Assembly: GCF_021028975.2 (NCBI RefSeq)
Contig: NC_059427.1
Span: 91,574,001 to 91,638,000 of the forward strand
DNA: 64,000 nucleotides
Direction: 5' to 3'
Source of the DNA: Sphaerodactylus townsendi
Lineage: Eukaryota
Positions within the stretch are counted from its first letter, which is position 1, and each line of letters opens with the position of its first letter. Position numbers and translations under genes: made by a program. Below, piece after piece: positions 17,190-63,139 of the stretch. The notes below the pieces were generated by a model. It worked only from the letters and a program-made list of their open reading frames with translations. It did not search any database and was not told the DNA's origin.

Positions 17190-18354
17190 CAGGGACGTAG
17201 ATATAGATTTTTATGGGGGGGTTCGCCCCCACCCACCCCTGAGGTGGGCCCACGCCTCCCCAAGCCCCGCCCCGGCCTCAGTGCTTATAAAAGCAGCTCT
17301 CCGAGGCCAGAGACAGCAAATCTCCTGCCCTACCCTCCCCCATTTCCCCCACCAGCTGGGCTCCCAGCCAGCAGCCTCTTCTGCCCTCCCCTCTGGGCAG
17401 AGGTGTAGCTAGGGAAAATGGAGCCCAGTGCAAAATTTGAGTTTTGCGCCCCCACCCATGGGTGGCCGCTGTGATGCTGGAATCCACCCCCAAACAGCAT
17501 CACTTTCAATGGTGTTTAAACTAGAGAGCTAAGATTCTTCTTTTAAATCCACCTTAAAGGGAGAATCTGGGATCCCCAGTTAAAACAACATTGAAAGTGA
17601 TGCTGTTTTGGGATGGATTATCCACCAACCTGAAACAGCATCACTTTCAATGTTGTTTTAACTGGGGACCCCAGATTCTCCCTTTAAATCCATGCTGAAA
17701 GGGGTGGATTTAAAAGGAGAATCTGGGAAAACTTGGGGATTGCCTGCTGTCAGGGGTGCAATTGTAAAGCTAGCAGCACCAAAACTTCAGGGTATCTTTA
17801 GGAGACTCTCCTGATACCACCCAGGTCTAGTGAAGTTTGGTTCAGGGGGTCCAAAGTTAAGGCCCCTCAAATGGGTAGCCCCCATCTTCTATAGCTCCCA
17901 TTGGAAGCAATGGAGGATGGGGCACCCCCTTGGGAGTCCATAACTTTGGACCCCCTGGACCAAACTTCACAAAACCTGGGTGGTATCAGTAAGAGACTCT
18001 CCTGATGATACCACCCAGATTTGGTGAAGATTGGTTCAGGGGGGTCCAAAGTTATGGACCCTCAAAGGTGTAGCCCCCATCTTCTATTAGCTCCCATTGG
18101 AAACAATGGGGGATGGGGCACCTATGGACCCCTGAACCAAACCTCACCAAACCTGAGTAGTATCATCAGGAGAGTCTCCCAAAAAATCCCTGAAAGTTTG
18201 GTGCTGCTATCTTAAAAATTGTGCGCCCTGCAAGCCAAAAAACAAAAAAACACTTAAAATATTTAAAAACCCACTAACTGGGGTTGGTGGGTGGAGCTTC
18301 AGATATGTAATGGGGGGGTTGAGCCCAAGAACCCCCCCCCCGCCTACGTCCTTG
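17190..18354. mobile_element. Non-autonomous TIR transposon with a 6-bp TSD
   Basis: TIRs cagggacgtag / ctacgtccttg; agttgc on both sides (17184-17189, 18355-18360); interior homologous to 44279-45339. Confidence 0.8.
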
Positions 18355-20423: not shown

Positions 20424-20588
20424 NNNNNNNNNNNNNNNNNNNNNNNNNNNNNNNNNNNNNNNNNNNNNNNNNNNNNNNNNNNNNNNNNNNNNNNNNNNNN
20501 NNNNNNNNNNNNNNNNNNNNNNNNNNNNNNNNNNNNNNNNNNNNNNNNNNNNNNNNNNNNNNNNNNNNNNNNNNNNNNNNNNNNNNNN
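20424..20588. other. Assembly gap
   Basis: Run of N. Confidence 1.
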
Positions 20589-21486
20589 ACTCCCTCACCT
20601 TCCTAACTTTTTCAGACAGGAAAATCACTCACTGACCAGTTTTGTCAGATTTTCCTGATCCCTTTCCCTTCAGGGACTGATGTGCTTAAGAAATGGAAGT
20701 GTAAGGTATAAGAAAAGCACTTTCCCAGAAAAGCCCTGTAGCTATCCCAGAAAGTAAAAGATGCCTGTTATTTTAAACTCACTAGCAAACCACTGGATAA
20801 GGCACACAAAATAATAATACTGAGTCAGATTTTAAACTTAAACACAATAAGAGATTTATTAATGGAGAACATATGGGAAAGAGAGATTATTAACTTGGAG
20901 ATATGGAATGAATGATGCAAATAGGCAGAAGAAATATACACTTGGCAAAGAGATTTAGTATTCAGTTTTTCAAGCACAGACTTAATAAGACTTTCAGTTT
21001 CAGTTCAGCTTAGATGCTATTCAGTTTCTTTGATGGTACAGTTCCTTAAATTTAAGATGTTCTGGCTAATGGCAATCACAGTCAGATTCCTAGCAGGCGT
21101 GGTACTCAGAGTACCCTCACTCAGCCTTCCCAGTTAGAAAACCCAAATTAAAACATAAAACACTCTACTGAGGAAACACAAAGCATAACCCAGTACTCCG
21201 GACTAACTGATATCTAGGAATTCTTCCCTCACTTGAAGATATTCCTCACTGATTTATATGTATGGCCTTTCAGTTTGGCCCCTCAATAAACCCCTCCACG
21301 AATTTTCTCAGTCTGTGCGTATTAATGCTTTCATCCAGCCTACAGGCTGATATGAGAAGAACCAGTCACATACTTTGACTGAACTATTCATCTCAGAGAT
21401 GTTATGCTTCAAAATTCAGCTAAGGCACCATATTTTGGGTGCTGTGTGGTTTCCGGGCTGTATGGCCGTGTTCTAGCAGCATTCTC

Positions 21487-21529
21487 TCCTGACGTTTCGC
21501 CTGCATCTGTGGCTGGCATCTTCAGAGGA
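21487..21529 (-). ncRNA. Minimal type I hammerhead ribozyme motif (mirror copy)
   Basis: Exact reverse complement of 21579-21621. Confidence 0.75.
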
Positions 21530-21578
21530 TCTTGTGTGCCTTATCCAGTGGTTTGCTAGTGAGTTTAAAACAACAGGA

Positions 21579-21621
21579 TCCTCTGAAGATGCCAGCCACA
21601 GATGCAGGCGAAACGTCAGGA
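21579..21621 (+). ncRNA. Minimal type I hammerhead ribozyme motif
   Basis: tcct-CTGAAGA-tGCC-loop-GGC-GAAA-cgTC^agga: intact core, stem I tcct/agga, stem II gcc/ggc, and the truncated stem III typical of Penelope hammerheads. Predicted cleavage is after 21617. Confidence 0.75.
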
Positions 21622-21974
21622 GAGAATGCTGCTAGAACACGGCCATACAGCCCGGAAACCACACAGCACCCAAGTGATTCCGGCCGTGAAAGCCTTCGAC
21701 AATACATTAATACCATAGTTCTTAACAACAGGAATTCTAAAGTCTAAACATCTCTCAAATTGTTCTGTCAGGGAGTTAACCTCCTCCCCCTCTGCAACAT
21801 CTACCATTAGGCCAAACAGAGTGTAGGATGCCATAACCAATCAGATGGCTTCCCTGTTCCTAGGTCTTTATGCCTCATTCTGAACATAAACAATTATTTG
21901 TTTCAGAAAGACCTGTATTTTAAAATCAACTTTTCTTCTGCAGTTTGTCACATCTATTTAAAATAAATAGTTAT

Positions 21975-22384
21975 TATTTCTGCACGGCGGCAGCAGCGCT
22001 TCTCCAACAGCATAATTTATGCCGTTGGAGGTGTGGGGACTCCTACCCCACTCACCTGCCTCTCCAGCGTCGCTCTGGAGGGCTGCAGGGACCCGCCCTT
22101 GCTGCCCTCTGACCCCTGGAGGTCGGAGGACAGTGTGGGCAGGTCCCTGCTGTTCTCCAGAGTGACGCTGGAGAGGCAAGTGAGTGGAAGCGATGGGGAA
22201 AGGGGTGGCTTCCCTGCGGTGCGGTCGCACCACCGGGATGATGCAGTTTTTTGAATGAGCGAGTTTTTCAGGGATGGCTTCAGGCCGCCTGAGGAAAGGC
22301 AGGACGACGCTGCTGTGATGCAGCAACGCCGGCCATGCGAACGCTCTCCCAGGGATGCTTCATTTGGCCCGTGTGGAAAGGGCC
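21975..22384. mobile_element. Palindromic PIF/Harbinger-like MITE
   Basis: Right end gtgtggaaagggcc; internal ~50-bp inverted arms at 22048-22098 and 22137-22187; CpG-rich. Confidence 0.55.
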
Positions 22385-23799
22385 ACAGAGACACACAATA
22401 TTATTATAATAAAATATTTATTATTATATATTATATTATTCATATTGTTATAATATTATCACAATATGATACTGGACCACTGTTTGTCATCTGGTATGGG
22501 TAGGAAAAGAGGCTTTCCTTTTGACTCAAGAGTTTGACAACCTCCCTTCTACCAAGTAAAATAAGCTGGAAGATTTATTTACTTTTGGAGTTAATACCAG
22601 TAATAGGTTTTAGTTCCTTCAAGATATGTCTGTTGATTATATCGACACAGAGGGGAGAAAGGTTCAGGAAAATACACTACTTAGCCTTAGTTCTATGTTT
22701 GTTCCTAAAATACCCACAGCTGTAGACAAACCTCAGGTACTTGCTGAGGGGAAAGATAACCTTGATCAGTATGACATCTTAAGTTTATTAACATCCCAGA
22801 CATTTTTGATTTCTGAAACTCTCCAGAAGATAAGATTAATTCCTTGGCAGCACAATGCTTGTCTTTTGATTTTGGGCCTAAAAGGAACAATTCTGCTGGC
22901 TTTGTGAATAAATTATCATCTTACCGAAGCACACTATACAAAGGCCTGATCATTCCATTATTATTCTTGATAGATTCAGGGTTTCCTTATCTGTATGTCC
23001 CTATCAAGGACAGATCATAAACTGGCTTGAGAAAGGATGTATTAAAGAGTACCTAGTATTTCTGTTGCAATGTTATCCTAGGGATATTGATTTGAAATAT
23101 TTTGATAGACTTTCAGGCTTACTGTAAGAAGATTGCTTGTCCCTTACTTTTTACTTTCCTCAGATCCCTGTGCAGATTACAGGCAATAAACACTGGTTTA
23201 ACTCATCTGGCATTTTTATTTTTAAAAAATGCTTTCATGCATCAGCAGTAGTATCCTTGTTTCCAACCAAAGCCCCAACAAAGTCCATAGTAAATAATTC
23301 AACTAAATTTGCCCCTCAAAATAAAGTCATATTACCAGTCAAGTAGCTATAATGGGGACATCCGAGGACAAACTCCCCGGGCGCCCCCAGTAAGTCACAT
23401 GCCCCCCCTGGAAAATAATCCCTCACACTTCTGACCCACCCATCACATCCCACATGGCAGGCCTTGGCTGGTCAGGCTGAGCAAGAGGGGGCGGGCTGCC
23501 TGAGCCATTGGCTGACCTGGAGTCTGGAGCCTGGGCTGTACGGAGCAGCCAGCCAGTCAGCACCCTGGCTGAAGCCAGGGCTACGCATCAGCTGGAGCCT
23601 GGGCTGCACCAGCTCAAGTAAATGGGTGTAGGAGGGTGGGTGGCTGAAGCTACCACGGGGGGGCAGGAGTGGGGAGGGGGCAGGTGGGTGTATAGCTGTC
23701 ACAGGGTGCGGGGGCCCCTGGGGGCACTATTTTGCCCAGTTATGCCTTTGCATGCGTTACATATGGGCAGTTTTTCAGAAACTGTTGATACAATTAGTG

Positions 23800-36381: not shown

Positions 36382-39300
36382 TTAATATTTACATAAACTT
36401 AGAATTTCTGTTTGTCTTTTCGTTTTATCCATATAGTCTAGCAGCGGTTTCCAATCTTTAACAAAATCATCTATCATTCCATTTTTAACTATTGTTGACA
36501 ATTTGTCATATCCCATATATTCTACAATTTTGTTGATCCATTCCGTTATCTTTGGGAGTTCTTCACTTTTCCAATTTCTTGCGACCAATATTCTAGCTGC
36601 AGAAAACATATAAAGAGCAATTTTTCTATGTTCTATTTTAATATCCATACCTAACAAATTCAATAAATACATCTCTTTTTTCCTTTTAAAAGTGTATCCT
36701 AATATTTCCTGAATTATTTTATGTAATTTTTCCCAAAATTCTATTATTTTGACACAGTCCCACCAAATATGGTCATAGTTTCCTTTATCTTTATGACAAC
36801 GCCAACACAAATCAGACACGTTTGAATACATTTTTGCTAATTTCGATGGGCATAAATGCCATCTGTAGAACATTTTTATTATGTTCTCTCTCAGGTTTAT
36901 ATTTTTTGTAAATTTTATGTTTTTCCTCCAGATTTGGTCCCATTCTTCTATATATATATTTCTCCCTACTGCTTCAGCCCAAATAATCATGTTTTTTTTG
37001 ACCCTTTCTCCTTCAGTTTTTTGGGTCAGTAATAAGTCATATACTCTTCTAACCATCCCTTTTTCGCTTTTGCATAAGCTGTCCCACAATTCACCTTGTT
37101 CCAGATTAAAACCAATTCCACGGTCCTGCTTAAATTTCTCTTTCAATTGATTATAAAGAAACCAATGGCATTGTACACCGTTTACTGTTATTTCAAATCT
37201 TTCTTTCAATTTTATCTCATCTTTATCCTTCTTCAGGATCTCTGAGTATCTTTTATATTTCATATTGCTGGCATTAGGTCTCAGTATGCTTGCTTCATGT
37301 GGGGATATCCAACCTGGGGTCTTAATCAAAGTTGTCAGTTTGTACTTTTCCCAAGTTTTCCTGATAGATTTCCTTACAAAATGGTTATCAAATTGTTTGT
37401 TAACTATACATTTATTATACCAAATATAAGCGTGCCAGCCGTAGATTAAATCATGGCCTTCTAGATTCAACAGTTCAGTGTTTTCTAATGTCATCCAATC
37501 TTTGAACCACATCAAACTGGCCGCTTCAAAATATATTTGTAAATCGGGCAATCCAAGTCCCCCTCTTTCACTCTTATCACACATGTTGATGTAGCTTATA
37601 CGGGGCTTCTTCCCAGACCATACAAATTTTACAATGTCTTTTTTCCACGTTTCAAACCATTTATTTGTGATAATAATTGGTATCGTTTGGAACAGGAAAA
37701 TCATTTTGGGAAGGATGTTCATTTTTATTATGGCTATCCTGCCTAACATTGTCAATTCTAATTTCTTCCAGTTATCCAGATCTTTCCTGATTTTATTCCA
37801 GCACTTTTCATAATTGTTCTGAAACAGTAGAGAATTGTGTTTCGTCAGATAAATTCCTAAATATTTTATGACCTTTTCTGTTTTATATTCGGTTATGTCC
37901 AATATTTTTCTTTGCTGGTCTTTGGTCATATTAAACATCATAACTTTTGTTTTTATTTTATTTACCCTCAACTTTGACCATTCACTAAATTCGTCTAGGT
38001 TTTTTTGTAGGGCTTTTATCGAATTTTTTGGTTCTTCTAGCATGATGACAATATCATCAGCGAAGGATCTAACCTTATATTCAAAATTATTTACCTTAAT
38101 CCCTTTCATTTGTTTATCGTTAATTAATTTTTTGGCCAATACTTCTAATGCTAATATAAACAGAAGGGGTGATAAGGGACACCCCTGTCTGGTGCCCTTA
38201 CTGATGTTTATCCATTCTGTTAGTTCATTGTTGATTTTTATTTTTGCTCTTTGCTCCTTGTAAATTGCTCCAACCCAGTTTATAAAGTTTCCCTCACTAC
38301 TTACTCTTTCCAAAATTTTTCTTAGAAAGCTCCAGTCCAGGTTGTCAAAGGCTTTCTCCAGGTCTATAAATACAAGAATCGCTTGCTTGTCTATTCTATT
38401 ATTAAGATATTCTATCATGTCAACTATAGTTCTCACATTGTTCTTTAGATATCTTTTTGGTAGAAACCCATTTTGTTCTTTGCCAATTATACAACTTAAG
38501 GGGCCTTTTATTCTTTTAGCAAGTATTGCCGCAAATATTTTATAGTCCGAATTTAACAGGGATATAGGACGGTAGTTTCTTACCGAAGTTTTGTCTTGTC
38601 CTTCTTTTGGTAACAAGGTAATTATTGATTCTTTCCATGAATCAGGGATCTGTTTGGTTTCTTTAATATTATTCATAACTGTATATAATATTTCTATTAC
38701 TTGATCCTGAAATTTTTTATAGAAAATATTCGGCAAGCCGTCTATTCCTGGTGATTTATTCAATTTTAGTTTATGAATGGTTTCTACAATTTCATTCTTT
38801 GTTATTTCTGCATTCAGTTGGTTTTTATGTTCAACAGTAAATTGAGTAATCATATTCTTCTGAATATATTCCTGTAGTCCTTCTTCCTTACTATCTAGGC
38901 CCTTATACAGTTCTGAGTAATATTCTACAAATCTCCTTAATATATCCTCCTGTTTGGTATAGCTTTGCTTTTCTCCTTTAATTTCAACAATTCTACTTCG
39001 CTGATAATTTTTTTTAAGTCTACTTGAAAGCCACTTTCCGGGCTTATTAGCATTTTCAAAGTAATGCATTCTTGCATATTTAATTTTTTTTTCCATTTCA
39101 TTGGTCACTAACAAATCAAATTGATTCTGCAAGTTCTTCATCTCAGTCTTTAGTTTTTCATTTTGTGGATCTTTCACCAGTTCATTTTCAATTACTTGCA
39201 TTTTATTTAATAACTCCTTTTCATGCTTTACTCTTTCTTTTCTCCAGATATTGTTTTCCTTAATAAATAGGCCTCTAGCATAAGCTTTGAATGTATCCCA

Positions 39301-40146
39301 GACTGTGTTAACATTAATTTCAGTTGTCCAATTAATCTTAAAAAAGTCTGTAAATTCTTTCCTATTCCTTTCAACTATTATGTCTTTTTTTAGGAGATAT
39401 TCATTTAGTCTCCAACTCCCTCTCTTCTTTTCAACGGCCACTTTCCACATTACTGCTCTGTGATCTGATATTATTTTTGGTAATATCGTAACCTCCCTTG
39501 TTCTTACACTCAGATCTTGTGTACAGAGTATCATGTCTATTCTTGTATTTGTCTTATAATGGTCCGATCTGTATGTGTATTCTTTTATAGAACCATTATG
39601 TTTTCTCCATATATCCACCAGTTTTATTTCATCCATCAATGAAAAAAAAGTACTCGGAAGTTTACCGTTTTGTCCACCTCTATTTGATTCAGATTTTTTA
39701 TCATGGAGAGATGAAATTACCCCATTCCAATCTCCCAATAAAATCACCTGCATATAGTCTAATTTCGCTATTATATCTTTAAGTTTTTGAAAGAACTTGC
39801 TTTTGTTTTGATTTGGAGCATACACACCCATAATCAGGGTTTTTCTATTTTCCCAATTTACTTCAATACCAATAAATCTTCCTTCGGTATCTTTAATGAT
39901 TTCTTTTGGGTCTAAATCTTCCTTTACATAAATTACCACCCCTGCCTTTTTCTTTTCCTCCCTTGACGAATGAAAGTTTAAGCCTAATCTTTTATTTACC
40001 AATAGTCTCTCATCTTTTTTGAGCATGTGTGTTTCTTGCAAACAAATTAAGTCGTAATTATTTTTTTCTAATAAATGAAATATTTTCCTTCTTTTTTGTG
40101 GCACATTCAGGCCATTAATATTCCAAGAAATCAACTTTAACTCCAT
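36382..40146 (-). CDS. L1 ORF2p (APE endonuclease, reverse transcriptase, CCHC knuckle), ~1254 aa
   Basis: EN motifs SWNINGLN, LQETH, GDWNG and SDH; RT motifs YRPISLLN, DLEKAFD, GTRQGCPLSP and FADD; C-terminal CWRC-x8-H-x4-C. Confidence 0.95.
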   Translation of the reverse strand: MELKLISWNINGLNVPQKRRKIFHLLEKNNYDLICLQETHMLKKDERLLVNKRLGLNFHSSREEKKKAGVVIYVKEDLDPKEIIKDTEGRFIGIEVNWENRKTLIMGVYAPNQNKSKFFQKLKDIIAKLDYMQVILLGDWNGVISSLHDKKSESNRGGQNGKLPSTFFSLMDEIKLVDIWRKHNGSIKEYTYRSDHYKTNTRIDMILCTQDLSVRTREVTILPKIISDHRAVMWKVAVEKKRGSWRLNEYLLKKDIIVERNRKEFTDFFKINWTTEINVNTVWDTFKAYARGLFIKENNIWRKERVKHEKELLNKMQVIENELVKDPQNEKLKTEMKNLQNQFDLLVTNEMEKKIKYARMHYFENANKPGKWLSSRLKKNYQRSRIVEIKGEKQSYTKQEDILRRFVEYYSELYKGLDSKEEGLQEYIQKNMITQFTVEHKNQLNAEITKNEIVETIHKLKLNKSPGIDGLPNIFYKKFQDQVIEILYTVMNNIKETKQIPDSWKESIITLLPKEGQDKTSVRNYRPISLLNSDYKIFAAILAKRIKGPLSCIIGKEQNGFLPKRYLKNNVRTIVDMIEYLNNRIDKQAILVFIDLEKAFDNLDWSFLRKILERVSSEGNFINWVGAIYKEQRAKIKINNELTEWINISKGTRQGCPLSPLLFILALEVLAKKLINDKQMKGIKVNNFEYKVRSFADDIVIMLEEPKNSIKALQKNLDEFSEWSKLRVNKIKTKVMMFNMTKDQQRKILDITEYKTEKVIKYLGIYLTKHNSLLFQNNYEKCWNKIRKDLDNWKKLELTMLGRIAIIKMNILPKMIFLFQTIPIIITNKWFETWKKDIVKFVWSGKKPRISYINMCDKSERGGLGLPDLQIYFEAASLMWFKDWMTLENTELLNLEGHDLIYGWHAYIWYNKCIVNKQFDNHFVRKSIRKTWEKYKLTTLIKTPGWISPHEASILRPNASNMKYKRYSEILKKDKDEIKLKERFEITVNGVQCHWFLYNQLKEKFKQDRGIGFNLEQGELWDSLCKSEKGMVRRVYDLLLTQKTEGERVKKNMIIWAEAVGRNIYIEEWDQIWRKNIKFTKNINLRENIIKMFYRWHLCPSKLAKMYSNVSDLCWRCHKDKGNYDHIWWDCVKIIEFWEKLHKIIQEILGYTFKRKKEMYLLNLLGMDIKIEHRKIALYMFSAARILVARNWKSEELPKITEWINKIVEYMGYDKLSTIVKNGMIDDFVKDWKPLLDYMDKTKRQTEILSLCKY

Positions 40147-40233
40147 ACTAATTAACACTATTAACAAAATCCACAATAAATATCTTACAATTAAATTCAT
40201 TTTCATAATTAATTTTCTATAATACAAAATTCA

Positions 40234-41097
40234 TTAATTATAATATATTCTTTTTTTACTTAACTCTTTGAGTTCATTTTCTATTTTACCCAAGAATTCT
40301 TTGGCTTGTTGGATTGAGGTGATTTTCATTCTTCTCTCTTTATAAGTTAAGGAGAGTCCGTCAATATCTTCCCATTTATATCTTATATTTGTTTTTCTCA
40401 GTACACTTGTAAGGAAGTCATATTCACGCCTCTTCTTCAAAATTTTATAAGGTGTCTCTTTCAGAATCAACACTTCTTTGGAATTTATTTTTAACTTGGA
40501 TTTGGAGTTTTTTTTCAAAATCTCTTCTTTGGTTTTTTGTCTAGCGAAGAAGACCAAAATGTCTCTTTCTCTACCTTCTCCGGATGGTTTCTGATTCAAC
40601 CTAAAAGCTCTTTCGATATCTTCCTCCATCACGTCATCTTCAGTGTCTAAGTATTTGGCTAGATTTGTTATAATTAATTTTCTTGTTTTTTCTCCTTCAT
40701 ATTCAGGTACACCTCTCAGTCTCAATATATTTTGTTTTTGGTGTAGCTCTGTTAATAATACCTGATTCTCCAGTTTTTTAAACTCCACTTCCCAGTCAAG
40801 CATTCTCTGGTCACTCTCATTTTGATGATCCTGTAGTTGGTTACACTTTTGTTCTATCTCCATCATTTTTTGACTCATATCTTTAATTATTTTAATCTCT
40901 GATTTCATATCATTAATTTCTGTACAGACCGTATTAAATTTCTTATCCATTGCACTTAATTTGCCCTCTAGCTCGTTAAACCGCATTGTATTGTCCTTCT
41001 GCATGCCATTCATCATTTCAATTACGTAATCAAGTTTCGCTTCCATTTCCGTCTTTTCCGATTTCTCAATAAGGCTTGCTTTTCTGGTTTTATTCAT
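40234..41097 (-). CDS. L1 ORF1p (coiled coil + RRM/CTD-type RNA-binding protein), 287 aa
   Basis: Heptad-rich N-terminus followed by NILRLRGVPE and IERAFRL motifs typical of L1 ORF1p; lies upstream of ORF2. Confidence 0.9.
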   Translation of the reverse strand: MNKTRKASLIEKSEKTEMEAKLDYVIEMMNGMQKDNTMRFNELEGKLSAMDKKFNTVCTEINDMKSEIKIIKDMSQKMMEIEQKCNQLQDHQNESDQRMLDWEVEFKKLENQVLLTELHQKQNILRLRGVPEYEGEKTRKLIITNLAKYLDTEDDVMEEDIERAFRLNQKPSGEGRERDILVFFARQKTKEEILKKNSKSKLKINSKEVLILKETPYKILKKRREYDFLTSVLRKTNIRYKWEDIDGLSLTYKERRMKITSIQQAKEFLGKIENELKELSKKRIYYN

Positions 41098-41961
41098 TTC
41101 TTTGGTAACTATTAATTCTAAGTTGTTTTGTTAGGTTTTATAGTATTACAGTCCTGTAGTTTTCCCCTTTCTCTCAGGAAAGTCCTTAATGCTTTCAATG
41201 TCGGGCGGGGGTTTTAAATCCACCACACCTGCTTCACTTTTCTTCCGCCCCTCCAGTAAATACAGACTACGCCCGCTCGAAATAAACTTTTACAGTCCTT
41301 TTTCTCTTTTAGAAGTTTATTATGTTCCAGTTGTTATATGGAAGGTTGCTTACAGTGAAGTTGCTGCTTCCCCCGTCCTCAGTTTGAAGCCGGCTCGGCG
41401 TTCAGGCGCTTCGGCGTTCAGGCGCTTCGGCGCTTCTCTGCCTCCCGCGCCGCCCCGTTCGCTGCGGGCTTGCTTCTGGGGTTTTGTTGTTTTGCTGCCG
41501 GCAGGTTATATTTCTTTGTCTTTGTCTCTCCTTTTAATCCAGGAGAGAGTGCTGGTTTCTTCAGTGAATCCCCCCCTTTATTTTGAGGGGGTCACGCTAT
41601 CCAGCTAAAGGGTGGGGGTTGAACGGAGCAACGAAACTTGCCTCCGTCTTCTTCACCTCGCAACCGGAAGTCTTCAGGCTTATTGTTATTGTAGCAACTT
41701 TTTGCCCTTGTAGAAGATATTTTTTCCTGAAATACAATGGATTCTTAGAAACTCTTCTTTTGCATTTAAGTTTTGTGTCTCCTGGTTTAAGAAAGAAAAC
41801 ATGGGGTAGTGCCTGAAGCACTGCATTTGGCAGGGTCAGATCTTCAGCTATGATGCTGGATGCTTGGTCAAGTCACCATCTTTTTGCTCGGTCTACGTTC
41901 TGTGGCTCTGAGCATCTTGAAGAAAGGGGAAAAATATAAATAGACCAAACAAAGGGGAACA

Positions 41962-42065
41962 TTGGGGTGCTGTGTGGTTTCTGGGCTGTATGGCCGTGTT
42001 CTAGCAGCATTCTCTCTTGACGTTTCGCCTGCATCTGTGGCTGGCCATGAAAGCCTTCGACAATA
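41962..42065. mobile_element. Internally deleted Penelope-like copy
   Basis: Left inverted arm joined directly to the gaaagccttcgacaata tail; flanks aaaggggaaca / aaatgggaaca (10/11, TSD-like). Confidence 0.8.
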
Positions 42066-42978
42066 AAATGGGAACACTGTTTTTGGAATGACCATATACA
42101 TTTGCTCTGTGTTTCCAAAAATTAAATTTGCCTGTGTCTCTTGCTTGCTGTCATCGTGCTTTAGTCAGCACCACATAAATGACAGAACATAATTAAACTT
42201 TTGTCACAAAAATAAGCAGTTTCAAAGGGTACCCAATGTTGGTCTGCAATAGAACAGTTAGATTTGAGTCCAGTAGCACCAGACCAACAAGATTTGGGGG
42301 GCATACACTTTTAAGAGACAAAGCTCCCTTTTTATGTAAAAGCTTATATCCCCAAATTTCTGTTGGTCTTTAAAGTTCTACTGGACTTGAATCTACGAAT
42401 AAGCAAAGACACAGCAAGACATAGATTTCGGGACATCAGAAGGGATTTTGAGGCTCTGGGAAGAAAGCTGAAGGATCTGGATGTACAAGTTGTAATTTCA
42501 TCTCTACTCCAAGTTGAAGGACATGGCCCATGGAGAGAAAGAAGAATAGTGGAGGTGAACAACTGGTTTTGCAAGTGGTGCCGCCAGAAACTATTTGGGT
42601 TCCTGGACCCTGGCCTGTGGTTGCATGAAGAGGGACTGTTGGCAAAGGATGGGTTGCACCTCACGCCTGTAGGTAGAAACATCTTTGCCAGGAGGCTCAC
42701 AAACCTGATCAGTAGGGCTTTAAACTGAGTTATGTGGGGGAGGGACAATATTCAAACAGACAGAAGTTCATCAAGTGATAGTGATGATAGTCCAAACGTT
42801 ATAGAGAGAACTGAGTGAATAGGTCAAGAAGGCAACAGCAGGAGGGAAAAAACTTTAAAGAAGCAGCCAGAGGAAATACACCATGGCCTTCGATGTCTCT
42901 ACACCAATGCACAGAGTATGGGAAATAAACAAAATGAACCTGAACTCTTAACACAGCAAAGCAAATATGATATTATAG

Positions 42979-43573: not shown

Positions 43574-43757
43574 NNNNNNNNNNNNNNNNNNNNNNNNNNN
43601 NNNNNNNNNNNNNNNNNNNNNNNNNNNNNNNNNNNNNNNNNNNNNNNNNNNNNNNNNNNNNNNNNNNNNNNNNNNNNNNNNNNNNNNNNNNNNNNNNNNN
43701 NNNNNNNNNNNNNNNNNNNNNNNNNNNNNNNNNNNNNNNNNNNNNNNNNNNNNNNNN
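43574..43757. other. Assembly gap
   Basis: Run of N. Confidence 1.
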
Positions 43758-54192: not shown

Positions 54193-55083
54193 TCAAAACG
54201 GCTTCTCTGGTCTGCTGCCAACTTTCCCTTCAGGGGACGTTTTACAGATCACACTGTTCGTGTTTTTACACCGGCATCCCGGCCGACTGACTTGGTCATA
54301 GCATCGCTGCGACAGTTTCACGCAGCCGGTTGCAGGCAGGTAGCATAGCAAGCACGGCAGAAACAGAGAGAGCGCGCTCATGAAAGACCAACGGGCACAG
54401 CAGTTTGAATGAGAGCAGGAGCATGGGTGGTCTGCACAGGAACCTTCGTCATCCTCATTGGTGCAGTGGTAGAAGATGCCCTTCACCAGACACATGCAGG
54501 TCGCGTAATTGACCAGGTTCTGAGCGGAGCAGAGGCACTCTTGGTTGCATACCCAGCAGGAGGGCAAAGTCCTCGGCAGGGCGCACTCCTTGCACTTGCA
54601 TTTTCCACAGGCTTCACACAACAAAAAGTGCTTGTCCGCCTCCAGAGATGTGGGACCCTTGAGATCTAGAGGCTTGCAGTTAATCACTTTGGGCTGAATC
54701 CGGACAGCTCTCGGGGAGGAGGAGTCAGCCACTGGCGCTGGCACCATGTGATCCAAAAGCCTTTGATCTGAAGACGTGCTGCTGCTGCTGCTGATGGAAC
54801 TGGGTCGCCCACTGAAAGAAATCCATGGGTGGGTGATGTCTTGCTCACATCTGGGCAGGTGAGTAGGTTCATGGTGGCCCCTGGGATACTTCTGAGCAGC
54901 CAGCTGGACCAGGGTGGGGTTGTCAATGTAGTCATTCTCAATGTGTGTGGTCTTCATTTGGTCAATAGGGAGGATGGTCAGAGGATGCTGTAGTCTGCCG
55001 TAGGGGATACGACTGTCCAGGAGTGGCTGTACCATGGTGGAATTGGGGACCACAGTAATATTGTGAGGCATACGAGGTTCCAT
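54193..55083 (-). CDS. SPRY4: Sprouty RTK signalling antagonist 4, single coding exon, 296 aa
   Basis: Translation MEPRMPHNITVVPNSTMVQPLLDSRIPYGRLQHPLTILPIDQ... contains the NDYIDNP Tyr motif, the Ser-rich SSISSSSSTSSDQRLL segment, the Cys-rich Sprouty domain and a C-terminal RPEKPF. The ATG is at 55083; the ORF track's extra 7 residues start at a non-ATG codon. Confidence 0.97.
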   Translation of the reverse strand: MEPRMPHNITVVPNSTMVQPLLDSRIPYGRLQHPLTILPIDQMKTTHIENDYIDNPTLVQLAAQKYPRGHHEPTHLPRCEQDITHPWISFSGRPSSISSSSSTSSDQRLLDHMVPAPVADSSSPRAVRIQPKVINCKPLDLKGPTSLEADKHFLLCEACGKCKCKECALPRTLPSCWVCNQECLCSAQNLVNYATCMCLVKGIFYHCTNEDDEGSCADHPCSCSHSNCCARWSFMSALSLFLPCLLCYLPATGCVKLSQRCYDQVSRPGCRCKNTNSVICKTSPEGKVGSRPEKPF

Positions 55084-55128
55084 TCTCAGGCTGTTCTTCA
55101 GCACTGGGAAACCCTGCTTTTAGGTGTC

Positions 55129-61788: not shown

Positions 61789-62761
61789 CTATGTCAGTCT
61801 AAGAATGGGCCGAAGTTATTTCTTGTCTACAGTTAAGTAAATTCCAGTATTTTACCTGTTTAGGCCAATATCAGATTTTAACTATGCTTTGTCCATACAG
61901 GTAGTGAACACAGCACACACTTTTTTGGGCTATCCCACAAGATATGAGAATTCCTTAGCTTAGACTAAACCTTCCCAGTACCTGGAAGAGGCAGCAAACG
62001 GGGAGATAGGTTTTAGCCTGACATTCTAGGTTGTGAAGTGGTATGGTCCAGGAAAAACAGAGCCAAACTTTTATTCACTTCTGCCCCACAAAGTCACAAG
62101 CTTTTTTACCCTGTGCCCAATAGTATGATGCCTTTTCAGTAAATGTAGTAATAGTAGCTTTGGTTCCTATTTCCTATGTACCATTTTTATAGAGCCTTGG
62201 TGAGGATGGGGAACAGAAGTCTAGGATTTTATCCTAAAATTAGGGTGAATAGTATAAACCCACCTCTCTTCCACAGGCTGTCAGAAGTTAGGAGAAGGAG
62301 CTTTCTAAACCCTAGGGTTACCAATGTCCACAATTTAGCTCCAGAGATTCTGAATGCCTTGTCTGGAGGGGGGAGGGGTGCTATATGACTCCTATTGAGA
62401 ACCACTGATTGAGCTGTGTGCTAATGCTGCATGTTTGAAATGACCCTTAAAATAGCATATGCATTGAATTAATTGCATGCTGACTTTCCCCTGCAACATC
62501 CATCCATCTTGTTTGTCACAGTTAAATTTTCTCCTTCCTACAGCAGCTGTCACCTGAGAAGATCTTTAGACTGTTCCAAGAACAGTGTGTCATTGCTCCT
62601 CAATTATCTACATAATGCATTGTTTACTAGTTACATTTGTGTTACATCCCTCCCTCCAACTGCTCAGATATGGGGTTCTCATGTGTCCCATGAACGAAGG
62701 CTGGTCCATGCCTGCTAAGTTTCAGAGTCCCTACTGTTTTAAGAGACATTTAACAGAGGAA

Positions 62762-62858
62762 GATCCTCTGAAGTTGCCAGCCACAGATGCAGATGAAACG
62801 ACAGGACAAAATGCTACTAGAACGCGGCCACATAGTCTGGAAATCACACAACATCCCA
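62762..62858 (+). mobile_element. Degenerate Penelope-like repeat with a mutated hammerhead core
   Basis: gatcctctgaagttgccagccacagatgcagatgaaacgacagg... is homologous to 21577-21673. Confidence 0.75.
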
Positions 62859-63139
62859 GAGGAAGAGAGAATGATTATACGTATCAGAAACATTGGAGTC
62901 TATCATTTCTAGAAAATGAACTAGGCATTTGCACAGTGTGTGCTTCAGTTTCTGTTCAGAGTTCTGGGCTTTATGCAGAAATTACAAGCTTTGGCTTACT
63001 GTAAAGGGAAGCATTTTTATACCAACATGTCAAGTCACGGTATGCTGATTTAGCACTCCCTGCAAGTCATGAGAGTTTTAGGAAGGCAGGACCTGATGAA
63101 GAGATTGGAGGGGGGGGGGGGAAGGAATGTTGGAGGAGG

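What the first reader, a model, noticed from the sequence alone, without database searches (positions are those of the whole stretch)
21435..21705. Twin-hammerhead Penelope palindrome whose 45-bp spacer is an inverted copy of nearby host DNA
Seen: perfect 97-bp inverted arms enclose the spacer 21532-21576 (ttgtgtgccttatccagtggtttgctagtgagtttaaaacaacag). This is the reverse complement of 20765-20809 at 44/45, about 720 bp away in the LTR-like element that hosts the insertion. Known: Penelope-like elements carry minimal hammerheads and can have inverted pseudo-LTRs. Inference: the spacer was copied from local DNA or RNA by RT template switching during integration, so each insertion may record a piece of its target locus between two ribozyme arms. 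Any guide-like or silencing role is speculation.
Basis: partly seen in the sequence, partly recalled or inferred. Interest (0 to 1): 0.8.

Follow-up and report, generated by a model that had tools for sequence, protein, structure and literature searches.

The report
Two-armed Penelope stub with locally copied filler
This is a young, dead 277-base stub of a Penelope-like (Poseidon-type) retrotransposon made of two head-to-head copies of the element's start. The 45 bases between them were copied, inverted, from host DNA 723 bases away, so the locus preserves a trace of how this poorly understood class of jumping gene seals its insertions.

Summary
Two perfect 97-bp inverted arms (21435-21531, 21577-21673) enclose a 45-bp spacer (21532-21576). 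The spacer is the reverse complement of 20765-20809 at 44/45, and that is its only other match in the window.

The insert (21435-21711) is flanked by an 8-bp target duplication, ACCATATT / ACCATAGT. Each arm is positions -12 to +85 of a Poseidon-type Penelope-like element and matches the published green-anole PAc element. The match covers the minimal hammerhead over the start codon and the one-sided 38-bp "tail".

The two arms end exactly at the two internal reverse-transcription start sites described for PAc. PAc nicks and extends both target strands in vitro. My reading is that each target strand primed a cDNA, both cDNAs ran to the RNA 5' end, and the ends were joined through 45 nt of templated filler.

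The favoured geometry is fold-back of the left cDNA-tipped strand onto its own resected flank. The enzyme, element RT or host repair polymerase, cannot be told.

Not supported:
- an "LTR-like" host element;
- a filler in every insertion, since a second two-armed copy in this window has none;
- any guide-like role.

Earlier notes of this scan report similar flank-copied spacers at other loci of this genome, one of them followed up.

The parts
21427..21434 (.). Left copy of the target-site duplication, ACCATATT. It ends in ATT, the preferred PAc endonuclease motif.
   Evidence: for the sequence; for the ATT preference (PMC11167929).
21435..21531 (-). Inverted arm: element positions -12 to +85, tail-less. 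On the + strand it reads as cDNA continuous with the top-strand target 3' end.
   Evidence: The +85 boundary equals the start of the PAc 'tail', nt 85-119.
21487..21529 (-). Minimal hammerhead motif of the left arm, the mirror image of 21579-21621.
   Evidence: exact core match on the - strand at 21488-21525.
21532..21576 (+). 45-bp filler: the reverse complement of 20765-20809, 44/45.
   Evidence: (pair I3).
21577..21673 (+). Direct arm: element positions -12 to +85. The ORF start codon is at 21589.
   Evidence: The translation MPATDAGETSGENA... matches 26/41 residues of Poseidon_Ac_1p.
21579..21621 (+). Minimal hammerhead motif. Stem I is UCCU/AGGA, the core is CUGAAGA, and a bulged U follows. 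Stem II is 6 bp (GCCAGC/GCAGGC). Then come GAAA and the palindromic ACGU, and the predicted cut follows GUC, 26 nt past the ATG.
   Evidence: layout as in PMC11167929 and the min-HHR description in PMC4209133. Catalysis was not tested.
21674..21711 (+). One-sided 38-bp 'tail', element +86 to about +123, present on the direct arm only.
   Evidence: Tails of 30-40 bp at one end are described in PMC8557442 and explained by two RT start sites in PMC11167929.
21712..21719 (.). Right copy of the target-site duplication, ACCATAGT (7/8 with the left copy).
20765..20809 (+). Host source of the filler. It is bordered on the right by AATAATAAT. It is bordered on the left by GATGC, which resembles the element end GATC(C).
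41962..42069 (-). Comparator copy 2: an inverted tail-less arm (+85 back to about +3). It is joined directly, through the microhomology GGC, to a 23-bp direct piece that carries the tail end. There is no filler. The TSD is GGGAACA (41955-41961 / 42070-42076).
62763..62857 (+). Comparator copy 3: an older (84-88%) single direct unit of about -12 to +85. The TSD is AGAGGAAG (62755-62762 / 62858-62865).

Best explanation
The feature is a dead-on-arrival insertion of a Poseidon-type Penelope-like element (PLE).

Step 1. The element's endonuclease cut both target strands 8 bp apart, leaving 3' overhangs.

Step 2. Each 3' end primed reverse transcription at one of the element's two internal start sites. 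The top strand started at +85 (tail-less) and the bottom strand at about +120-123 (with tail).

Step 3. Both cDNAs ran to the same RNA 5' end at -12, so both end in ...GGATC-3'.

Step 4. The two identical-sense cDNA ends then had to be joined head to head. Here the left cDNA, still attached to the top strand, folded back onto its own strand about 720 nt upstream. That stretch had been made single-stranded by 5' resection of the bottom strand.

Step 5. The folded-back end copied 20809 down to 20765, let go, and annealed to the tip of the right cDNA (shared G; GATC-like homology). Fill-in then completed the palindrome.

Shown: the anatomy, the homology to PAc, the boundaries, the TSD, and the origin and orientation of the filler.

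Inferred: the order of events, the resection and the fold-back.

Open: which polymerase made the filler, the element's RT or a host enzyme such as Pol theta.

The insert has no coding capacity and no evident function.
For: - Arms, spacer and source are exact as described.
- One 8-bp TSD encloses arms plus spacer, so this was one integration event.
- The arm is homologous to Poseidon_Ac: an identical 23-mer across the hammerhead cut site, 26/41 residues of the ORF start, the ATG at the stem II start, and the cut site 26 nt after the ATG.
- The arm outer ends fall at +85 and about +120-123. The published tail spans nt 85-119, bounded by two RT initiation sites.
- PAc protein cleaves and extends both strands in vitro and prefers ATT. 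The top-strand primer here ends in ATT.
- On the + strand the left arm is antisense and contiguous with the top-strand 3' end. The right arm's minus strand is antisense and contiguous with the bottom-strand 3' end. That is what two target-primed cDNAs look like.
- The boundaries -12 and +85 recur in the two other copies in the window.
- The inverted orientation of the filler is what cis fold-back on the resected left end predicts. After resection the bottom strand at the source is gone, so a DNA-templated copy by the right-hand cDNA is not possible.
- Inverted 5'-truncated copies, one-sided tails and palindromes at the inverted junction are recorded features of PLEs.
- Cis 'snap-back' templated extension is documented for Pol theta (PMC4912351, PMC5728401) and reported for some RTs (10.1101/2022.03.14.484287), from abstracts listed.
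Against: - Entry homology is poor: the cDNA tip GGATC faces TTATT at the source border, so only AT pairs and the terminal base is mismatched. Exit homology is 1 nt contiguous, or 4 nt if one base is bulged.
- A 720-nt fold-back loop is longer than the templated insertions usually ascribed to Pol theta (my knowledge, not tested here).
- No read-level or cross-species confirmation of the locus was obtained.
- An N run lies 177 bp left of the source (20424-20588).
- That the RNA 5' end is at -12 is inferred from three cDNA ends in this window, not measured.
Confidence: 0.62

Rival explanations
1. RT template jump onto local RNA. On reaching the 5' end of the element RNA, the PLE reverse transcriptase jumped to a nascent host transcript tethered near the site. 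It copied 45 nt and then jumped to the other cDNA.
For: - PLE RTs are telomerase-related and are credited with template jumps and capture of host sequence (PMC3846280).
- L1 insertions show template switches of the secondary RT (PMC11702581).
- Junction homologies of 0-2 nt suit end-to-end jumping.
Against: - No gene or transcript is evident over 20.6-22 kb. The nearest coding features are a LINE at 36-41 kb and a Sprouty ORF at 54 kb, both on the minus strand.
- A jump by the left cDNA needs a plus-strand RNA and a jump by the right cDNA needs a minus-strand RNA, and neither is shown.
- The earlier follow-up of a similar locus (s1-743300) judged RNA copying unnecessary. That is an AI note which I did not check.
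Confidence: 0.17
2. Filler added later. The insertion first formed a spacer-less palindrome, with the two cDNA tips annealed through their self-complementary GATC. The palindrome centre later broke and was repaired by alternative end joining, with a templated insertion from nearby DNA.
For: - Long perfect palindromes are fragile at their centre (my knowledge).
- Spacer-less palindromes of the same family are noted elsewhere in this genome (s1-740369, s1-751676, unchecked).
- Copy 2 may be a centre-deleted palindrome.
Against: - Both arms are intact to the same nucleotide (-12) and each keeps a full GATC. A GATC-annealed palindrome has only one GATC, and centre breaks usually nibble the arms.
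- The arms are still 100% identical, so little time has passed.
Confidence: 0.12
3. Assembly artefact: a chimeric or fold-back read created the palindrome and the misplaced 45-mer.
For: - PLE tandem/inverted structures are known to trouble assemblies (PMC8557442).
- An N run lies 850 bp away.
- Read support was not obtained.
Against: - The unit sits between clean 8-bp target duplications in otherwise continuous unique sequence.
- Its outer ends fall on the two biochemically defined RT start sites.
- The same architecture recurs at 41962-42069 and, by earlier notes, at many other loci.
- Several independent runs hold half or more of the sampled words of 20600-22600, though which words is unknown.
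Confidence: 0.04
4. The spacer belongs to the master element and the match 723 bp away is a relic of another copy.
For: None found.
Against: - The source at 20765-20809 has no element sequence on either side.
- The other two copies in the window lack the 45-mer.
Confidence: 0.02

Closest known systems
Poseidon_Ac / PAc, the Penelope-like element of the green anole (Arkhipova 2006; Frangieh et al. 2024, PMC11167929)
   Same: - The hammerhead spans the pLTR/ORF junction, with the ATG at the stem II start and the cut site 26 nt downstream.
- An identical 23-mer lies across the cut site, and 26/41 N-terminal residues match.
- The insert ends fall at +85 and about +120, the tail boundaries.
- The target primer ends in ATT.
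- Both strands were used as primers.
   Different: - It is a different host, said to be a gecko in the scan's notes (not verified here).
- About a third of the residues differ.
- This copy is a 277-bp stub without RT or endonuclease.
- A filler at the head-to-head junction was not mentioned in the passages of that paper I read.
Canonical PLE insertion architecture: inverted 5'-truncated copy, one-sided 30-40-bp tail, palindrome at the inverted junction (PMC8557442, PMC3846280)
   Same: Head-to-head inverted arms, a tail on one arm only, a short TSD, and a self-complementary motif (GATC) at the arm tips.
   Different: - Published cases describe direct or overlapping inverted junctions. In Pen1_Av of Adineta vaga they describe 0.9-1.5 kb of captured host DNA next to the 3' pLTR.
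- Here a short filler sits exactly between the arms and its template is identifiable 723 bp away in cis.
L1 twin priming (5'-inverted insertions; as summarised in PMC11702581)
   Same: The second target strand primes a second cDNA, giving an inverted 5' part, a preserved TSD, and a junction resolved by end joining or template switching.
   Different: - In L1 the two parts are adjacent, non-overlapping pieces of one RNA, and the second priming uses microhomology at variable sites.
- Here both arms cover the same -12 to +85 and start at fixed internal RT sites.
Templated insertions of alternative end joining (Pol theta snap-back / SD-MMEJ; PMC4912351, PMC5728401)
   Same: An inverted copy of sequence from the same strand near the break, placed between two ends that lack usable homology, with short imperfect junction homology.
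   Different: - The filler (45 nt) is longer and the template (about 720 nt away) more distant than is typical.
- The ends being joined are cDNAs.
- The polymerase is unknown.

Membership tests
Penelope-like element, Poseidon clade (PAc type) | Sequence homology to a Poseidon pLTR/ORF start | tested here: met
   The translation of 21589-21711 shares 26/41 residues with Poseidon_Ac_1p. The 23-mer GGCGAAACGTCAGGAGAGAATGC is identical to the consensus. The comparison was made by eye.
Penelope-like element, Poseidon clade (PAc type) | ORF with reverse transcriptase and GIY-YIG endonuclease | tested here: not met
   Only the first 41 codons are present, and no PLE ORF occurs anywhere in the window. 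The insert is a non-autonomous stub made by the family, not a complete member.
Penelope-like element, Poseidon clade (PAc type) | Inverted 5'-truncated copy adjacent, a 30-40-bp tail at one end only, and a short TSD | tested here: met
   97-bp inverted arms, a 38-bp tail on the right arm only, and an 8-bp TSD at 7/8; features as defined in PMC8557442.
Penelope-like element, Poseidon clade (PAc type) | Insert ends at the two internal RT initiation sites (tail boundaries about +85 and +119) | tested here: met
   The left arm ends at +85 and the right arm at +120 to +123, counted from the ATG at 21589 and compared with Fig. S2 legend of PMC11167929.
Hammerhead ribozyme (minimal PLE type) | Core CUGANGA ... 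GAAA ... NUH cut site, short helix I, long helix II with a 5' bulged base, and a palindromic helix III stub for dimerisation | tested here: met
   Seen directly at 21579-21621: UCCU, CUGAAGA, bulged U, GCCAGC/GCAGGC, GAAA, ACGU, a cut after GUC, and AGGA; descriptor from PMC4209133.
Hammerhead ribozyme (minimal PLE type) | Match to a curated Rfam hammerhead model | tested here: not met
   No hammerhead family appeared even at E up to 10 on the single arm. There were only spurious miRNA-hairpin hits caused by the palindrome. This is expected for motifs without a helix III.
Hammerhead ribozyme (minimal PLE type) | Self-cleavage | not testable with these tools
   PAc's version cleaves only with the element's protein. 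In a transcript of this locus the motif would be buried in a 97-bp duplex with an MFE of -229 kcal/mol.
Snap-back templated insertion (alt-EJ type) | The filler is an inverted copy of sequence on the same strand near the break | tested here: met
   The spacer is the reverse complement of 20765-20809, on the left flank, 723 bp away.
Snap-back templated insertion (alt-EJ type) | Microhomology at entry and exit of the templated stretch | tested here: inconclusive
   Entry has AT followed by a terminal mismatch. Exit has 1 nt (G), or G[C]ATC against GATC with a bulge. A GATCC at 20657 went unused. One locus gives no statistics.
Snap-back templated insertion (alt-EJ type) | Dependence on Pol theta or another defined polymerase | not testable with these tools
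   Needs genetics or biochemistry.
   The flanks have no second copy in the window, no direct repeat pair of 40 nt or more flanks the site in 12-32 kb, and no sizeable ORFs lie nearby. No genome-wide repeat library was available, so a solo LTR cannot be excluded.

The most novel reading that the evidence does not exclude
Sealing of the head-to-head junction by copying nearby single-stranded host DNA is a regular step of PLE integration, carried out by the element's own telomerase-related RT working on a DNA template. Each filled fold-back would then record which flank was resected and how far. The thousands of stubs in this genome would give a natural dataset for the unresolved last step of PLE transposition.
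Probability: 0.2. Interest if true: 0.65.

Novelty: new variant of a known kind. Interest (0 to 1): 0.42.

Why it matters
How Penelope-like elements finish integration is openly stated to be unknown. [quoted passage not shown]

This locus is an in vivo trace that agrees with three in vitro findings for PAc:
- both target strands are primed;
- there are two fixed internal RT start sites;
- the endonuclease prefers ATT.

It adds one thing: two cDNA tips of the same sense can be bridged by a filler copied in cis from the flank. If the pattern is frequent, as unchecked earlier notes of this scan suggest, a simple genome-wide census could distinguish three sealing mechanisms: fold-back repair synthesis, RT jumps to RNA, and later palindrome repair.

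For the host the insert is most likely neutral. Its only foreseeable activity is to form a long hairpin if transcribed.

Tried and rejected
- Rfam scans of the region and of one arm alone gave no hammerhead family. The miRNA hits (MIR530, mir-1295 and others, all far below gathering score) are artefacts of the perfect hairpin, so I rejected them.
There is therefore no read-level check, no depth estimate of copy number for the source, and no empty-site test in the other organisms listed.
- Two exact-pattern scans of metagenome contigs, one for the arm tip and one for the 23-mer shared with PAc, found nothing. No further fold-back copies could be collected outside the window.
- Simple self-priming of one cDNA (a hairpin whose second arm is copied from the first) is rejected. 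The spacer tip would have to pair with the spacer start and leave extra bases that are not there. Also, the shorter arm ends exactly at the independent +85 RT start site, as it does in copies 2 and 3.
- Classical single-RNA twin priming is rejected, because both arms cover the same -12 to +85.
- A DNA-templated copy by the right-hand cDNA is rejected on geometry, since the needed bottom strand is the one removed by resection. It remains possible only through invasion of unresected duplex.
- The coincidence of the source's right border with (ATT)n on the minus strand, the endonuclease's preferred motif, was considered as a sign of a second nick. I dropped it as too likely by chance in AT-rich DNA.

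Full report
**1. The observation**

- Positions 21435-21531 and 21577-21673 are perfectly complementary over 97 nt. Pairing stops at 21434/21674.
- The 45 nt between them (21532-21576) match the minus strand of 20765-20809 with one mismatch. These are the only two places in the window at up to three mismatches, with none expected in shuffles.
- Beyond the 45 nt the two contexts are unrelated, apart from 1-3 nt at each border.
- The right arm continues for another 38 nt of element sequence, to 21711.
- The whole 277-bp unit is bracketed by ACCATATT (21427-21434) and ACCATAGT (21712-21719), an 8-bp target-site duplication at 7/8.

**2. What the arms are**

The arm holds CUGAAGA, then AUG, then GAAACGUC. 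I compared it with the Poseidon_Ac consensus printed in the supplement of Frangieh et al. 2024 (PMC11167929).
- A 23-mer across the hammerhead cut site is identical.
- The reading frame opening at 21589 gives MPATDAGETSGENA...ESLRQYI. That is 26/41 identical to the start of Poseidon_Ac_1p.
- As in PAc, the start codon sits at the beginning of hammerhead stem II and the predicted cut is 26 nt after it.
- The motif has the traits of the minimal PLE hammerhead: a 4-bp helix I, a bulged base before a 6-bp helix II, and a palindromic ACGU in place of helix III (PMC4209133).

Rfam's hammerhead models do not detect it. They return only sub-threshold miRNA hits that reflect the hairpin. Membership of the ribozyme class therefore rests on the direct match to a tested relative, not on a model score. 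Cleavage is untested.

**3. The boundaries are the informative part**

Counting from the ATG, the left arm ends at +85 and the right arm at +120 to +123.
- Frangieh et al. report that PAc starts reverse transcription at two internal sites, and that the genomic 'tail' of about 34 nt (nt 85-119) is the stretch between them.
- They also report that the protein cleaves and extends both target strands, preferring ATT.

At this locus the top-strand primer ends in ATT. On the + strand the left arm is antisense and continuous with that primer. The right arm's minus strand is antisense and continuous with the bottom-strand 3' end. The locus therefore looks like two target-primed cDNAs, one from each start site.

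Both cDNAs stop at -12. The other copies in the window show the same landmarks.
- Copy 2 (41962-42069, TSD GGGAACA) has an inverted arm starting at +85. It is joined through GGC to a short direct piece that carries the tail end.
- Copy 3 (62763-62857, TSD AGAGGAAG) is a single unit from about -12 to +85.

I infer that the template is an RNA whose 5' end lies at about -12. In the PAc consensus, the position homologous to -12 lies roughly 30-40 nt downstream of a TATATATT. This is an inference, and the gecko pLTR was not seen.

Inverted 5'-truncated copies, one-sided tails and palindromes at the inverted junction are described PLE features (PMC8557442; PMC3846280). The architecture itself is known.

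**4. The filler**

Two cDNAs of the same sense cannot simply anneal. Their tips (...GGATC-3') can pair only through the self-complementary GATC, which would give a spacer-less palindrome. Here 45 nt of host sequence bridge them.

The geometry constrains the source strand.
- After 5' resection of the left-hand end, the bottom strand is removed and the top strand around 20765-20809 becomes single-stranded.
- The top strand's own 3' end, now tipped with the left cDNA, can fold back and copy 20809 down to 20765. That yields exactly the observed inverted orientation.
- It can then pair with the right cDNA's tip. The G at 21577 is shared, and the source continues GCATC against the element's GATCC.
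- The right-hand cDNA could not copy this site from DNA after resection.

Entry homology is weak, with AT followed by a terminal mismatch. A GATCC at 20657 was not used. Homology alone therefore does not explain the choice of site.

Cis 'snap-back' templated extension is a documented activity of Pol theta (PMC4912351, PMC5728401). It has also been reported for a bacterial RT (10.1101/2022.03.14.484287), according to the abstracts listed. The sequence cannot say which enzyme acted here.

**5. Rivals**

- A jump of the RT onto a local transcript is possible, but no transcription is evident here.
- Later repair of a broken spacer-less palindrome is possible, but it fits poorly with two intact GATC tips and arms that are still identical.
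- An assembly artefact is unlikely, given the TSD, the biochemically meaningful ends and the recurrence of the architecture.
- A master-element origin of the spacer is close to excluded.

**6.

- 'LTR-like host' found no support. The flanks have no second copy in the window, there is no LTR pair, and there are no nearby ORFs.
- 'Each insertion may record its target locus' is too strong, because copy 2 has no filler.
- 'Twin hammerhead' is anatomically true but functionally misleading. The motifs are on opposite strands, and a transcript would fold into a 97-bp perfect duplex (-229 kcal/mol, z = -27.6), which would bury the ribozyme. No evidence bears on a guide or silencing role.

**7. What the scan noted before**

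Earlier notes for the same genome are AI notes that I did not check.
- They list further fold-backs whose spacers copy nearby DNA: s1-743300, followed up and confirmed by another agent; s1-743107, inverted and about 640 bp away; s1-743324; and s1-740258, a patchwork.
- They list spacer-less palindromes: s1-740369 and s1-751676.
- They list many two-armed stubs: s1-750853, s1-743042 and s1-740250.

I formed my reading before seeing these notes. They suggest the pattern recurs, and they match the expectation that GATC-annealed spacer-less forms exist. They are leads, not independent evidence.

**8. Novelty and score**

The element, its hammerhead, the two-armed form and the tail are known. Four full-text searches and the papers I read did not turn up a short, cis-templated, inverted filler at the head-to-head junction of a PLE. 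The nearest cases are kilobase-scale host capture in a rotifer Penelope family and templated insertions at L1 and repair junctions.

I class it as a new variant of a known kind, of moderate interest. It has no evident function, but it is a usable clue to an openly unresolved integration step.

Noticed in passing
window 36382-41097 (-): Two adjacent long ORFs on the minus strand, of 287 aa and 1281 aa. The larger has endonuclease/exonuclease/phosphatase and RVT_1 domains, so this is an apparently intact L1-like LINE. PLE copy 2 lies about 900 bp beyond its upstream end.
   Followed up: partly
window 54193-55104 (-): A 303-aa ORF with a full Sprouty domain (Pfam PF05210, E = 3e-35). It is probably the single coding exon of a Sprouty-family host gene, and it places the window in ordinary host chromatin.
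   Followed up: partly
window 22048-22187: A GC-rich imperfect palindrome with 67-nt arms (84% complementary) and a 6-nt loop, 340 bp right of the PLE insert. Its nature is unknown. It also drew spurious miRNA hits in Rfam.
   Followed up: no
window 17480-18220: A dense cluster of nested inverted and direct repeats, with arms of 46-71 nt at 78-94%. It looks like a tandem/inverted array of a short repeat family.
   Followed up: no
window 21709-21711 and 42067-42069: In both two-armed copies the element's 3' junction reads AAT immediately before the target duplication. On the cDNA strand the first bases made are therefore ATT. In copy 2 this AAT is not contiguous with the preceding element sequence (ACAATA-AAAT, against ACAATACATTAAT in copy 1). 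This may hint at realignment or non-templated addition at RT initiation.
   Followed up: no
window 20424-20588 and 43574-43757: Two N runs of 165 and 184 bases. The first lies 177 bp left of the filler's source.
   Followed up: no
   Followed up: no
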